Shown in pieces: positions 4,610 to 20,730 of a stretch of 64,000 nucleotides of DNA. The position numbers were made by a program, and so were the translations under genes. The first letter of the stretch is position 1. Each line of letters begins with the position of its first letter. This stretch comes from Obrimoposthia wandeli. Its lineage: Eukaryota. The notes below the pieces were generated by a model. It was not told where the DNA came from. It saw only the letters and a list, made by a program, of their open reading frames with translations, and made no database searches. The stretch is from the NCBI GenBank assembly GCA_977020255.1, contig CDROCS010006559.1, positions 1-64,000 of the forward strand, written 5' to 3'.

Positions 4610-5605
4610 TTATAGTGATGGGCAAGAGTTGTCTGACATATAGTCATGGACTTTGATTTTACCAGCGATAATGTCTGCCTGCGCCTGATCAACAGCCGCT
4701 TTCATCTCTGCTGTAATTAAGTCTTTGTTATTGTCATCCAATGCCCAAGCAACACCGCCCTCGGCAAGGCCTAGTACATTAATACCTGGCTTCCAGCTAC
4801 CATCTTGTGCGCCTTTAAAAGCATTGAACGCGGCAACATCAACCTGCTTCGTCATCGAAGTTAACATAGTACCTGGGTGGATATGGTTTTGATTTGAGTC
4901 AACACCAATCGCGTACTTGCCCGCATCTTTAGCAGCTTGGTAAACACCGATACCGGTGCCACCAGCGGCGGCGAAAACCACATCTGATCCACGGTCAAAC
5001 TGACTGCGTGCTAACTCGCCGCCTTTAGCCGGGTCATTCCATGCAGTGGGGGTTGAGCCTGTCATGTTGCTGAAAACTTTTACATCATTAACTGCATATT
5101 TTGCGCCTTGTGCGAAACCACAGTTAAAGCGACGAATCAGAGGAATATCCATGCCACCTACAAAGCTTACAGCTTTGTTTTGCGACTTCAGGGCAGCTAA
5201 CATACCGACTAAAAATGAGCCTTCGTGCTCTTTAAAAACCACTGATTGGACATTTGGCTGATCTACAACTGCATCAATGATTGTAAACTTGGTATCCGGA
5301 AAATCTTTGGCTACTTTCTCAAGAGCCGGTGCTTGAGCAAATCCTACACCGAGAACTGGGTTAGCTTTACGCTGTGCCATTTTACGTAGCGCTTGCTCAC
5401 GCTGTGATGGATTAGTAACTTCAAACTCACGATAAGATATGCCACTTTCTTTCTTGAAGCGCTCAACACCTTCATAAACACCCTGGTTGAACGATTTATC
5501 AAACTTACCACCCATATCAAAAACAACTGCAGGCTTGATCTCTGCTGCCATTGCCGTGCTGGCCATTACTGCCGCTGTCGCCAGCGCTAAAAGTTGACGT
5601 TTCAT
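4610..5605 (-). CDS. BMP/PnrA-family ABC substrate-binding protein (purine nucleoside type)
   Basis: Signal peptide; GGKFDKSFNQ, FKEHEGSFLVG, IGVDSNQ motifs of the BMP family. Confidence 0.9.
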   Translation of the reverse strand: MKRQLLALATAAVMASTAMAAEIKPAVVFDMGGKFDKSFNQGVYEGVERFKKESGISYREFEVTNPSQREQALRKMAQRKANPVLGVGFAQAPALEKVAKDFPDTKFTIIDAVVDQPNVQSVVFKEHEGSFLVGMLAALKSQNKAVSFVGGMDIPLIRRFNCGFAQGAKYAVNDVKVFSNMTGSTPTAWNDPAKGGELARSQFDRGSDVVFAAAGGTGIGVYQAAKDAGKYAIGVDSNQNHIHPGTMLTSMTKQVDVAAFNAFKGAQDGSWKPGINVLGLAEGGVAWALDDNNKDLITAEMKAAVDQAQADIIAGKIKVHDYMSDNSCPSL

Positions 5606-5810
5606 GTAAATCTCCGTGATCTATTTATTATAATTTAGATGCAAAAAAACTATTTCACCAATCAAAAATACTTCCGATTAAGGAATGCGACTATCAAGAA
5701 TGACGTTAAAAGCAAAACTTTAGCCTTAAATCCAGTCCCATGATCCACCACTCAATCAAAGTCAGTGCCTCGTACAGAAAACCTACCGTACTAAAGGGCA
5801 ATGAACTGGC

Positions 5811-18242: not shown

Positions 18243-19103
18243 ATGCGTATATTTATTTTCACCGCCCTCCAATTGTTGTGTTGTATAAACTACAGCTATG
18301 CCGCCTCTTCTGTCTGGAAAATTGAATCAGCAGCACAAACCCTCTATCTTGGCGGCACGATTCATTTACTCAAAAGCAGTGACTACCCCCTACCACCTGA
18401 ATACAATCAAGCATTTATTAAAAGTAACATCGTTGTTTTTGAAACAGATCTTGGCTTATTAGATACGATAAAAGGCAAAAAACTAATAACAAATACACTA
18501 ATAGCGCAAGACGGCCGCCGTCTGACAGATATATTATCAAGCCCTGTTCTCAGCACATTGCAATCCAAGCTAGCCGACTACAACTTCACATTGGCGCAAT
18601 TCAATCCATACAAACCAGCCATGGCGGCCTTATCTTTGCAACTTGCCGAGCTTGCGAGGCTTGGGGTTGACAGTGAAGGCATAGACGCCCACTACTATCA
18701 ACGCTCGCTCGCTGCCGGCAAAAAGATAATTGGCTTGGAAACGCTGCAACAACAAGCTACCTTTATCAGTGCAATGGGGGAAGCTGACCCTGAAGCCTTT
18801 ATCAGCCAAACCTTAGCAGAGCTACAAGATATTGATCAGTACTATGAACAAATAGTCAGTGCTTGGCGTAACGGTAACCTCGAAGACCTAAATGAGCGAC
18901 TGGTAAAAGAGTACGCTGAGAATTATCCACAGCAGTATCAACAACTGATTGTTGTGCGTAATAACAACTGGATGCCTATTATCGAAGATCTGCTCAAGCG
19001 CAAAGATAACGCCTATGTACTAGTAGGCTTAGCGCATCTGGTAGGAAAGAAAGGCTTATTACAACAATTAGAAGATAAGGGTTTTAAAGTCAGCCAACTC
19101 TGA
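18243..19103 (+). CDS. TraB/GumN family protein
   Basis: Signal peptide, YLGGTIHLL, GLETLQQQ, RNNNW, VGLAHLVG. Confidence 0.88.
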   Translation: MRIFIFTALQLLCCINYSYAASSVWKIESAAQTLYLGGTIHLLKSSDYPLPPEYNQAFIKSNIVVFETDLGLLDTIKGKKLITNTLIAQDGRRLTDILSSPVLSTLQSKLADYNFTLAQFNPYKPAMAALSLQLAELARLGVDSEGIDAHYYQRSLAAGKKIIGLETLQQQATFISAMGEADPEAFISQTLAELQDIDQYYEQIVSAWRNGNLEDLNERLVKEYAENYPQQYQQLIVVRNNNWMPIIEDLLKRKDNAYVLVGLAHLVGKKGLLQQLEDKGFKVSQL

Positions 19104-19160: not shown

Positions 19161-19190
19161 CCATCGCCTTCTTTCACAGGCGATGGGTTT
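19161..19190 (+). terminator. Hairpin/terminator downstream of the TraB/GumN gene
   Basis: CCATCGCC-ttctttcaca-GGCGATGG followed by GTTT. Confidence 0.5.
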
Positions 19191-19300
19191 GACTCTTGTG
19201 AGAAACACAAAAGCTTGTTGAATGAGCAAGCTCGCCGATAAGCCGACCTCCCTTTGACAAGAGTGTCGTGGACAGCCATTCATCGCCCTTTTCTACGGAC

Positions 19301-19337
19301 AAAAAAATACCCAGCCAGTTTGCACTAGCTGGGTATT
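19301..19337 (-). terminator. Second copy of the rnpB terminator (in the repeat)
   Basis: AATACCCAGCTAGT-GCAA-ACTGGCTGGGTATT followed by a T tract; one U.G wobble relative to the first copy. Confidence 0.88.
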
Positions 19338-19420
19338 CTGGATGAGTGAGTTCACCGATAAGCCGCTTTCATCGAGGTAAGAGTGTCGTGGACAGTCATT
19401 TATCGCTCTTTTCTACGGAC

Positions 19421-19457
19421 AAAAAAATACCCAGCTAGTTTGCACTAGCTGGGTATT
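19421..19457 (-). terminator. rnpB intrinsic terminator
   Basis: 14-bp stem AATACCCAGCTAGT/ACTAGCTGGGTATT, GCAA loop, T tract. Confidence 0.92.
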
Positions 19458-19463
19458 CTGGAT

Positions 19464-19635
19464 GAGTGAGTTCACCGATAAGCCGGGTTCTGTCGTGGAC
19501 AGTCATTCATCTGGATAATATGTCGCCATATACCTCAAGCGACCTACCCGAACCCACCACGGGTCGCGGCACGCGGGTTCCTATTTGGTCTTGCTCCGAG
19601 TGGGGTTTACCTTGCCACAACATGTTGCCATGTGT

Positions 19636-19670
<35 letters not shown>

Positions 19671-19815
19671 GGCATCCGAAGATGCTTAGGCGGTCTTCTC
19701 TCTGCTGCACTTGCCGTCGGCTCACGCCGCCCAGACGTTATCTGGCACTCTACCCTTTGGAGCCCGGACTTTCCTCCACTGTGCGAACACAGCAGCGACT
19801 GTCTGGCGAACTCGG
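19464..19815 (-). ncRNA. rnpB: RNase P RNA (type A)
   Basis: Minus strand carries GAGGAAAGTCCGGGCTC, AGTGCAGCAGAGAG, AGGGTGAAAGGGTGCGGTAAGAGCGCACC, GAGCAAGACCAAATAGG and ACAGAACCCGGCTTATCGG; 5' GAGTTCGCC pairs with 3' GGTGAACTC; lies just downstream of rsmI. Confidence 0.98.
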
Positions 19816-19858: not shown

Positions 19859-20707
19859 TTAATCGGCAGCTGATTTACGGGCTAATGCTTCTTGGTACAA
19901 AGCATTTTTTTTCTCACCCGTGATTTTTGCCGTTAATGCACAAGCTTGTTTAACAGGTAATTCTTCAAGCATTAAAGCAAATACCCGCAGAGTTTCACGA
20001 CTAAAACCTTCCTCTTCTTGAACCACTGCTGGCGATACTAAGACAACAAATTCACCCTTCTGTTGATTGTGATCCCCCTCTACCCATTCACAAAGAGCCC
20101 CTAAATTATCGCCGTGAATAGTTTCAAACGTTTTAGTCAGCTCTCTAGCAATCACCACATAACGTTGCGGGCCCAAGACATCTCTCATATCTCTTAGAGA
20201 TTCAACAATGCGATGTGGCGATTCATAAAAGATAGTGGTCATTGGATCGTCTGCAATCGCCAGTATTTGATCACAGCGACCAACCCGTTTTGCCGGCAGG
20301 AAACCTTGGAAAGAAAAATTATTGGACGGTAATCCCGCGGCGCTTATCGCTGTGACTAGTGCAGAACATCCCGGAATAGGCACGACTTTAAAGCCGGCTT
20401 CACGTACTGCTCTTACTAAAATAAAGCCGGGATCGGAAATTAATGGCGTTCCTGCATCGGATATCAGTGCAATACTTTCGCCACTGTTCAACTTTGAGAT
20501 GATAGTATCAACTCTTTGTCTTTCATTGTGATCATGGACTGATATCATTGGAGTTTTAATGTTAAAATGCGCCATTAATCGAGAGCTGTGGCGAGTATCT
20601 TCTGCAGCGATTAAAGCAACGGACTGCAAAACCTCTATCGCTCGATGGGTTATATCGGCAAGATTTCCGATGGGTGTTGCAACCACATACAACATAGCAT
20701 CTGACAT
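19859..20707 (-). CDS. rsmI: 16S rRNA C1402 2'-O-methyltransferase
   Basis: LYVVATPIGNLADIT, AEDTRHS, SDAGTPLISDPG, FYESPHR. Confidence 0.96.
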   Translation of the reverse strand: MSDAMLYVVATPIGNLADITHRAIEVLQSVALIAAEDTRHSSRLMAHFNIKTPMISVHDHNERQRVDTIISKLNSGESIALISDAGTPLISDPGFILVRAVREAGFKVVPIPGCSALVTAISAAGLPSNNFSFQGFLPAKRVGRCDQILAIADDPMTTIFYESPHRIVESLRDMRDVLGPQRYVVIARELTKTFETIHGDNLGALCEWVEGDHNQQKGEFVVLVSPAVVQEEEGFSRETLRVFALMLEELPVKQACALTAKITGEKKNALYQEALARKSAAD

Positions 20708-20730
20708 TTTATTCAATCCTATTGGGGTTC

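What the first reader, a model, noticed from the sequence alone, without database searches (positions are those of the whole stretch)
19221..19510. rnpB 3'-end tandem array with a hypervariable cassette at the RNase P catalytic junction
Seen: on the RNA strand, rnpB ends GAAUGACUGUCCACGACA-GAACC-CGGCUUAUCGGUGAACUC followed by a terminator. The same flanks recur at an exact 120-nt period, but GAACC is replaced by CUCUUACCUCGAUGAAAG in the proximal copy and CUCUUGUCAAAGGGAGGU in the distal copy. The shared unit differs at only 4 of 107 nt, while the 13-nt insert cores match at 3 of 13, about chance level. Point drift cannot easily give this contrast. Known: GAACC covers the J2/4-P4 junction of conserved region V. 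From memory (please verify), E. coli rnpB is followed by ~113-bp repeats of the same design with a ~17-nt insert. If so, the architecture is deeply conserved or recurrently generated, and I know of no explained function. Inference: the array could yield terminator-bounded small RNAs with a variable guide-like loop, record repeated integration/excision at an rnpB att site, or provide alternative rnpB 3' ends.
Basis: partly seen in the sequence, partly recalled or inferred. Interest (0 to 1): 0.78.

Follow-up and report, generated by a model that had tools for sequence, protein, structure and literature searches.

The report
Disabled rnpB tail copies behind rnpB
Behind the RNase P RNA gene of this marine bacterium lie two tandem, catalytically disabled copies of the gene's tail, the same old repeat family known from E. 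coli; the supposedly hypervariable piece is a shared motif that has drifted slowly.

Summary
rnpB (19463-19814, minus strand) is followed at an exact 120-nt period by one full and one partial copy of its last ~45 nt. In both copies GAACC is replaced by 18 nt. The full copy carries a strong intrinsic terminator of its own.

The "hypervariable cassette" reading does not hold. About 190 such units from about 125 loci (E. coli, other enterobacteria, marine Nitrincolaceae-like relatives) all carry a homologous insert, CTNT...GAAAG. The window's proximal insert matches relatives at 15 of 18 positions. Unit flanks match the resident rnpB at 46-47 of 47 positions, which is concerted evolution. That alone explains identical flanks around drifted inserts.

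The only conserved RNA structure is the terminator. I found no promoter, no conserved ORF and no transcript evidence.

The shared block after the insert is the attachment core for at least two tyrosine-integrase island families: the flk islet in E. coli and DUF6538-type integrases in marine relatives. The latter sit at real rnpB or at the last pseudo-unit. The window has no integrase, so its site is empty.

Verdict: a new member of a known kind, the E. coli rnpB 3'-flank repeats (1983). The units most likely act as backup terminators and spare attachment sites. What the conserved insert does remains open.

The parts
19463..19814 (-). rnpB, RNase P RNA class A
   Evidence: Rfam RF00010, 327.8 bits, full-length match. 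A promoter-like site lies at 19856-19829.
19491..19511 (-). Block A of the true gene: 21 nt (J18/2-P2 3' strand up to ACA of J2/4) that is copied in each unit
19486..19490 (-). GAACC of the true gene (end of J2/4 plus the first two C of the P4 3' strand). This is the piece replaced in the units.
19458..19485 (-). Block B of the true gene: rest of the P4 3' strand, P1 3' strand and 3' trailer. It holds the integrase crossover core seen in E. coli and in relatives.
19421..19457 (-). Terminator T1 of rnpB (hairpin plus U7)
   Evidence: -25.3 kcal/mol; coordinates
19405..19420 (-). Spacer 1 between T1 and unit a
19384..19404 (-). Unit a, block A copy (1 mismatch)
19366..19383 (-). Unit a insert (18 nt, type 'CTCTTACCTC..GAAAG'), replacing GAACC
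   Evidence: It is 15/18 identical to the insert of L115, L146, L211 and L180.
19338..19365 (-). Unit a, block B copy (exact)
19301..19337 (-). Terminator T2 of unit a (1 change from T1, G-U in the stem)
   Evidence: -25.0 kcal/mol
19285..19300 (-). Spacer 2
19264..19284 (-). Unit b, block A copy (1 mismatch)
19246..19263 (-). Unit b insert (18 nt, second variant)
   Evidence: It is 11-12/18 identical to the inserts of L004 and of the terminal unit of L211.
19219..19245 (-). Unit b, diverged block B. The array ends here, without the repeat's terminator.
19161..19215 (-). Two unrelated hairpins between the array and the convergent TraB/GumN gene (18243-19103, +). They are not part of the repeat.
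   Evidence: Pfam PF01963

Best explanation
The array is a short member of an old repeat family: tandem pseudo-3'-ends of rnpB. Each unit copies the last ~45 nt of the gene plus its trailer and intrinsic terminator. The J2/4-P4 core (GAACC) is replaced by a 17-19-nt motif inherited from a common ancestor of all units, so no unit can complete a catalytic RNase P RNA.

Shown: the family exists in E. coli and other enterobacteria and in the window's closest marine relatives. The inserts are homologous across them. The flanks track each genome's own rnpB. The only conserved RNA structure is the terminator.

Inferred: copy number changes by unequal crossing-over between units. The flanks are kept identical to the true 3' end by gene conversion, while the insert has no template in rnpB and drifts. 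This gives the pattern of identical flanks around different inserts. The two window inserts are two old variants, not a diversifying cassette.

Inferred function: the units have no promoter-like site of their own, so they would be transcribed only by read-through of T1. They would then act as backup terminators ahead of a convergent gene. Their block B also offers extra copies of the attachment core that rnpB-targeting tyrosine integrases use. Such islands can therefore land in a pseudo-unit instead of in the essential gene. In this window the site is unoccupied.
For: - Anatomy and repeat statistics.
- Same design after E. coli rnpB, with 113-120-bp units and a 17-nt insert. Copy number is polymorphic among 5,426 E. 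coli genomes.
- Same design in Nitrincolaceae-like relatives L002, L004 and L007/G408.
- About 190 units in about 125 loci all carry a related insert, and none has an intact second GAACC copy.
- Unit flanks match their own rnpB best (46-47 of 47 in the window, E. coli and L083), while inserts group across lineages.
- RNAalifold on 21 non-redundant units finds only the terminator, with compensatory changes at 3 stem pairs.
- No sigma-70-like site in the units.
- Integrases on block B. The E. coli flk islet lies between rnpB and the units with a 12-bp direct repeat inside block B. Its excision by a tyrosine recombinase through direct repeats is reported in PMC3378880. DUF6538-type integrases lie directly after the real rnpB in L009 and after the terminal pseudo-unit in L116, L130, L180 and L211.
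- In G001 a 15-kb segment that starts with an integrase is bracketed by two units.
Against: - No transcript data cover the units. The RNA runs found hold only the conserved rnpB body of relatives, so read-through and termination at T2 are inferred.
- Gene conversion is inferred from the pattern, not observed.
- Conservation of the insert ends may partly reflect the search pattern used to collect units. The interior 9 nt are about as variable as the trailer.
- Why every unit keeps the insert, and why no intact duplicate exists, is not explained by a purely neutral history.
- The window has no integrase (two query families only), so a role as attachment site here is by analogy.
- Metagenome contigs across repeats can be misassembled.
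Confidence: 0.62

Rival explanations
1. The units are scars or arms of integrative islands. On this view islands that target the rnpB 3' end carry a pseudo-rnpB piece (block A, insert, block B) in their attachment region. Each integration leaves one unit, and arrays grow by accretion and island decay. That would also account for horizontal spread of the insert between enterobacteria and marine Oceanospirillales.
For: - Distribution is patchy. Only 3 of 32 unbiased rsmI-rnpB loci from relatives have units, and 1 of 401 sampled gammaproteobacterial genomes has the motif. Yet the inserts are homologous between orders.
- Long pseudo-rnpB copies with the same insert lie next to integrase fragments in L115, L146, L212 and G001 unit 3.
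- A 15-kb integrase-bearing segment in G001 is bracketed by units.
- L211 interleaves two terminator types, one of which is the type linked to the island-associated pseudo-rnpB copies.
Against: - The E. coli flk islet's far junction has only the 12-bp core and no block A or insert on the island side, so that island does not make units.
- The exact 120-nt period with near-identical spacers is what unequal crossing-over gives. Repeated imprecise island loss would not give it.
- No sequenced phage in the 50,697-record collection carries a unit.
- The window has no integrase or island remnant that I could establish.
Confidence: 0.2
2. Each unit is a small RNA gene bounded by a terminator. The insert would be a variable, guide-like single-stranded loop that targets other RNAs.
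For: Each full unit ends in a strong terminator. The insert is predicted to be unpaired in the consensus fold.
Against: - No promoter-like site in the units.
- No Rfam family, only chance-level terminator look-alikes.
- The insert is shared across genomes and usually identical within an array, which is the opposite of a diversifying guide.
- No structure beyond the terminator is conserved.
- No transcript evidence could be obtained.
Confidence: 0.07
3. The units encode small peptides that start at the ATG inside the copied GATGAATG. Open reading frames were noted in the E. coli repeats (recalled from Reed and Altman 1983).
For: ATG-initiated frames exist in most units. In E. coli one frame runs through consecutive units and is preceded by a GGAGG.
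Against: - Frames, lengths (9-75 aa) and sequences after the insert are not conserved.
- Insert length varies between 15 and 19 nt, which shifts the frame.
- The window's unit a lacks the first ATG.
Confidence: 0.04
4. The units are alternative or spare functional 3' ends for RNase P RNA, used by read-through or by recombination.
For: The P2 and P1 3' strands are kept identical to the true gene.
Against: Every unit lacks GAACC, that is, part of J2/4 and two P4 pairs of the catalytic core. This rests on established RNase P structure and the Rfam alignment. A swap into the gene would give an inactive RNA.
Confidence: 0.02

Closest known systems
Repeats in the 3' flank of E. coli rnpB (Reed and Altman, PNAS 1983). 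Cited from memory: the paper could not be fetched here.
   Same: Both sit directly after rnpB in the same orientation, with a period of 113-120 bp. Each unit copies the last ~45 nt of the gene plus a terminator. GAACC is replaced by a homologous 17-18-nt insert, and the array ends in a partial unit.
   Different: The host differs: a marine, Osedax-symbiont-like Oceanospirillales bacterium found inside a eukaryote assembly. There are 1.5 units rather than about 3.5. The two inserts differ from each other, whereas E. coli's are identical. Spacer and terminator sequences are unrelated.
Repeats after tyrT in E. coli (178 bp, 3.14 copies, each with the last 19 nt of tRNA-Tyr; source of rtT RNA). 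From my own knowledge.
   Same: Both are tandem units behind a stable-RNA gene, and each unit starts with a copy of the gene's 3' end.
   Different: The tyrT units are transcribed and processed into a known RNA. No such product is known or shown for the rnpB units. The tyrT copies carry no inserted motif.
Displaced 3' fragments of tRNA and tmRNA genes at the ends of integrative islands (Islander-type att repeats; PMC4383910 listed)
   Same: A tyrosine integrase crosses over inside the 3' end of a stable-RNA gene. The island restores the gene end and a partial copy marks the far end. This is seen for rnpB in E. coli ECC-1470.
   Different: The window's units are tandem, carry no island and hold an insert that a simple displaced fragment would not have.
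flk genomic islet of E. coli H3/H35/H36/H47/H53 strains (Feng et al. 2008, as described in PMC3378880)
   Same: It uses the rnpB 3' end (block B) as its attachment site and lies between rnpB and the repeat units.
   Different: It is an 8-9-kb island with an integrase and flagellin genes. Nothing of it is present in the window.

Membership tests
rnpB 3'-flank repeat family (E. coli type) | Lies directly downstream of rnpB on the same strand | tested here: met
   rnpB is at 19463-19814 (-). Units lie at 19219-19404 (-).
rnpB 3'-flank repeat family (E. coli type) | Head-to-tail units of about 113-120 bp | tested here: met
   Period 120, 96% matches. E. coli has 113 and 120.
rnpB 3'-flank repeat family (E. 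coli type) | Each unit copies the gene's last ~45 nt on both sides of GAACC | tested here: met
   Block A has 1 mismatch in each unit. Block B is exact in unit a and diverged in unit b.
rnpB 3'-flank repeat family (E. coli type) | GAACC replaced by an insert homologous to the CTNT...GAAAG motif | tested here: met
   Unit a fits fully. Unit b keeps the 5' half and AAAGGGA but ends in GGT.
rnpB 3'-flank repeat family (E. coli type) | Each full unit carries its own intrinsic terminator | tested here: met
   T2 folds at -25.0 kcal/mol with a U7 tail. The stem covaries across 21 units. The terminal partial unit lacks it, as in E. coli.
Attachment site of an rnpB-targeting tyrosine-integrase island | Integrase gene next to the site | tested here: not met
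   tblastn with the flk-type and DUF6538-type integrases found nothing in the 64-kb window. Only two query families were used.
Attachment site of an rnpB-targeting tyrosine-integrase island | Core sequence repeated at both ends of an inserted segment | tested here: not met
   Nothing is inserted between the units in the window. The feature is met in E. coli ECC-1470 and in G001.
Attachment site of an rnpB-targeting tyrosine-integrase island | Site is recombined by the integrase | not testable with these tools
   This needs an integration or excision assay. The report for the flk islet is taken from PMC3378880.
Small regulatory RNA gene | Own promoter or transcription start | tested here: not met
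   No promoter-like site in 19219-19420. This was a consensus scan only.
Small regulatory RNA gene | Conserved secondary structure beyond a terminator | tested here: not met
   RNAalifold finds only the terminator plus two trivial 3-4-bp hairpins without covariation.
Small regulatory RNA gene | Detected transcript | tested here: inconclusive
   The RNA runs cover 19456-19803 only and come from relatives. The units are uncovered.
Functional RNase P RNA 3' end | Intact J2/4 and P4 3' strand (ACAGAACCCGGCUU) | tested here: not met
   GAACC is absent from both units. Exactly one intact copy per locus was seen in all loci examined.

The most novel reading that the evidence does not exclude
The conserved insert is a selected safety catch, and the pseudo-units are decoy attachment sites. 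By destroying J2/4-P4, the insert would make any recombinant that carries unit sequence into the essential gene inviable, and no read-through RNA could fold into a second ribozyme. The intact block B would draw rnpB-targeting integrases into a harmless copy downstream of the real gene. That would be a host-side (or island-side) device protecting an essential RNA gene used as an integration target. It would explain why no intact duplicate is ever seen and why islands sit at the terminal unit in several lineages.
Probability: 0.15. Interest if true: 0.65.

Novelty: new member of a known kind. Interest (0 to 1): 0.4.

Why it matters
The repeats behind E. coli rnpB have been known since 1983 without an accepted function. 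This window shows that the same unit, including a homologous insert at the catalytic-core junction, exists in marine Oceanospirillales. Comparison with about 125 other loci adds three points. The insert is inherited rather than variable. The flanks evolve in concert with the resident gene. The locus is an attachment site for at least two integrase families, which sometimes use a pseudo-unit instead of the gene. This turns an old curiosity into testable questions: do the units terminate read-through, and do they divert integrases from an essential gene? It does not reveal a new kind of system.

Tried and rejected
- **Expression.** One run search and one read-laying run found only marine metatranscriptome contigs. 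These cover the conserved rnpB body of relatives (19456-19803). The likely source DNA run covers the flanks at about 4-5x, with fragmented contigs across the repeat. Nothing bears on unit transcription.
- **Literature.** Reed and Altman 1983 and Feng et al. 2008 are not held. Searches for rnpB repeats, rnpB/yhaC and rnpB integration sites gave nothing direct. The flk islet is cited through PMC3378880.
- **Phage-borne units.** Of 13 viral-contig pattern hits, 11 are chance. The other 2 (L083, L084) are host flank next to a prophage repressor. The cultured-phage collection has only one unannotated 2.5-kb Salmonella record with a partial match.
- **Broad taxon sample.** Of 401 sampled genomes of the class, only G001 itself (the query-centre genome, already known to carry units) has real pattern matches; the one further pattern hit (G341) looks like chance. 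The pattern is specific to a GTCYACG form of P2, so it undercounts.
- **Closest relative.** The closest relative (Osedax symbiont Rs2_46_30_T18, G005) has no rnpB in its assembly, so no close-strain comparison was possible.
- **RNA pairing of the insert.** Pairing with the spacer, which looks good in E. coli by eye, is not conserved.
- **Coding.** Rejected.
- **Island relic after unit b.** Only weak similarity to island left ends, so I do not claim it.
- **Second copy of a 14-nt insert/block-B junction in L083.** It lies just after the prophage repressor stop codon but is absent from L084. Left open.
- **Earlier notes of this scan.** None found.

Full report
**What is there.** The window is one bacterial contig inside a 1.35-Gb, 6,912-contig assembly, so it is an associate or contaminant of a eukaryote. 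Its RsmI is 97% identical over 66 residues to an 'Osedax' symbiont Rs2 contig. It is 79-82% identical to Nitrincolaceae-like and Oceanospirillales MAGs.

Rfam places a full-length class A RNase P RNA at 19463-19814 on the minus strand (327.8 bits). It lies after rsmI (19859-20716) and opposite lpoA. A TraB/GumN gene and an EAL-GGDEF gene lie downstream.

On the RNA strand the gene end reads as follows:
- block A (21 nt, 19491-19511)
- GAACC (19486-19490)
- block B (19458-19485)
- terminator T1 (19421-19457)

Then come a 16-nt spacer and unit a:
- block A copy, 19384-19404
- an 18-nt insert, 19366-19383
- an exact block B copy, 19338-19365
- terminator T2, 19301-19337

A second spacer and a partial unit b follow:
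- block A copy, 19264-19284
- a different 18-nt insert, 19246-19263
- a block B that diverges after 11 nt, 19219-19245

Tandem Repeats Finder gives period 120 and 96% matches.

**The E. coli parallel is real.** An E. coli chromosome fetched by similarity shows rnpB followed by units of 113 and 120 bp. Each has the same block A, a 17-nt insert in place of GAACC, block B and a terminator. The array ends in a partial unit. Across 5,426 complete E. coli genomes the match length varies from no unit to several. To my knowledge this is the repeat described by Reed and Altman in 1983, but I could not fetch that paper.

**The insert is not hypervariable.**
- The two closest relatives with usable sequence carry arrays of the same design: L002 (three units) and L004 (two units).
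- A third relative, a complete genome (L007/G408), has three longer units with the same kind of insert.
- A pattern scan of metagenome contigs returned 119 loci. Together with the others this gives about 190 units in about 125 loci.
- Every insert is a variant of one motif that begins CTNT and ends in GAAAG or a one-base variant.
- The commonest form, the E. coli one, occurs 90 times, and there are graded intermediates up to the marine forms.
- Within an array the inserts are usually identical.
- The window's unit a insert is 15/18 identical to the insert found in L115, L146, L180, L211 and L212, and similar to the proximal unit of L002.
- Unit b resembles the second marine type at 11-12/18.

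So the two window inserts are two old variants with counterparts in relatives.

One caveat applies. The second search pattern fixed the insert ends, so their conservation is partly ascertainment. The interior nine positions are about as variable as the 3' trailer.

**Why the flanks are identical and the inserts are not.** I compared the 47 flank positions (A plus B) of each unit with the true rnpB ends of ten lineages. Units match their own genome's gene best: 46 of 47 in the window, 46-47 in E. coli, 46 in L083. They match other lineages at 26-43. Inserts group the other way, across lineages. This is the signature of concerted evolution. The flanks are kept like the resident, strongly constrained gene end by gene conversion or unequal exchange. 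The insert has no template there and drifts. The conversion itself is inferred, not observed.

**RNA-level tests.**
- RNAalifold on 21 non-redundant units predicts only the terminator hairpin, with both-sides changes at three stem pairs. It also predicts two trivial short hairpins without covariation. The insert is unpaired.
- The consensus scan finds no promoter-like site in the units. The only minus-strand site is the rnpB promoter.
- Rfam has nothing there apart from terminator look-alikes below threshold.
- ATG-initiated frames exist, but their frames, lengths and sequences are not conserved, and the insert length varies.
- Public RNA runs hold only the conserved body of rnpB from relatives. 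The units are uncovered, so expression is untested.
- The units cannot supply a working gene end, because they lack part of J2/4 and two P4 pairs.
- No locus has a second intact GAACC copy.

**The locus is an integrase target.**
- In E. coli ECC-1470 an island of about 9 kb lies between rnpB and the repeat units. It carries a tyrosine integrase (Pfam PF00589), a flagellin gene and a repressor-like gene.
- Its two junctions share a 12-bp direct repeat that lies inside block B, and the island supplies a new, well-pairing P1 3' strand.
- This is the flk genomic islet. PMC3378880 reports that it is excised by a tyrosine recombinase through its direct repeats.
- Related integrases occur in L108, L137, L170 and L199.
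- In the marine clade a second integrase type, with a DUF6538 N-terminal domain, starts about 70 nt after block B.
- In L009 that block B belongs to the true rnpB. In L116, L130, L180 and L211 it belongs to the last pseudo-unit of an array.
- Pseudo-units therefore appear to serve as secondary attachment sites.
- In G001 the order is rnpB, two units, 2.3 kb holding a methyltransferase gene and an integrase fragment, a third unit that extends about 125 nt further into rnpB-like sequence, an integrase (partly masked by N, which I left as is), about 15 kb of cargo, and a degenerate fourth unit.
- L115 and L212 hold an almost full-length pseudo-rnpB with an internal deletion and the same insert. 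L146 holds a 3' half.
- The window itself has no integrase detectable with these two queries. Similarity of the sequence after unit b to island left ends is too weak to claim.

**Distribution.** Of 32 unbiased rsmI-rnpB loci from relatives, only L002, L004 and L007 have extra copies. Of 401 sampled genomes of the class, only G001 has the strict motif. That patchiness, together with homologous inserts in two orders, is easier to explain if units sometimes travel with islands. I keep this as the main rival, or as a complement. Two points argue against it as the sole origin. The flk islet's own junction lacks block A and the insert. And the exact period with identical spacers is the mark of unequal crossing-over.

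**Verdict.** The finding is a genuine, correctly described repeat and a new member of a known kind. The most likely working parts are the terminators (backup termination of a highly transcribed gene ahead of a convergent gene) and block B (spare attachment cores). The persistent insert and the absence of intact duplicates remain unexplained by neutrality. They support a modest chance (about 0.15) that the disabling insert is itself selected.

Noticed in passing
window 1-64000 (whole contig): The contig is bacterial (rsmI, lpoA, rnpB, EAL-GGDEF, TraB/GumN) but belongs to a 1.35-Gb, 6,912-contig assembly. Its RsmI N-terminus is 97% identical to an 'Osedax' symbiont Rs2 contig, so it is probably a symbiont or associate of a marine animal.
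   Followed up: partly
L083:9280-9300 (minus strand), just after the stop codon of the prophage CI repressor gene: A 14-nt exact second copy of the insert/block-B junction (CAGGAAAGCGGCTT) lies about 70 nt beyond the unit's terminator, at the edge of a prophage. It is absent from the sister contig L084. It could be that phage's attachment core, which would make a pseudo-unit rather than rnpB its target.
   Followed up: partly
L211 (minus strand) 496-900: A five-unit array built as a two-unit higher-order repeat. It alternates two terminator types. Block B is mutated to CGGCATA in the inner units, and one unit holds an internal 27-nt duplication. Only the terminal unit, next to the integrase, keeps CGGCTTA.
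   Followed up: no
L219 (G408:C1:1012000-1012760); L115 (minus strand) 5450-5760: Long pseudo-rnpB units in two different genomes share the same internal deletion, joining the P13 loop region to the P16-17 region. This argues that long pseudo-copies are ancestral and the short units are derived.
   Followed up: no
L215:1577-10461 (E. coli ECC-1470): The flk-type islet here carries, besides the integrase and flagellin genes, a YagK/YfjJ-domain gene and a serine-recombinase-family gene. The new rnpB 3' end it supplies pairs perfectly with the P1 5' strand, better than the native G-U pair.
   Followed up: partly
L091:1240-1290 (G001:C5): A run of 40 N lies inside the integrase gene that follows unit 3.
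   Followed up: no
window 19320-19446, as seen in run X23: The probable source run gives only 69-81-nt contigs across the repeat, with five variant letters (for example 19350 G>T, 19401 T>C). This could reflect further unit copies or strain variants collapsed in the assembly, so the true copy number may exceed 1.5.
   Followed up: no
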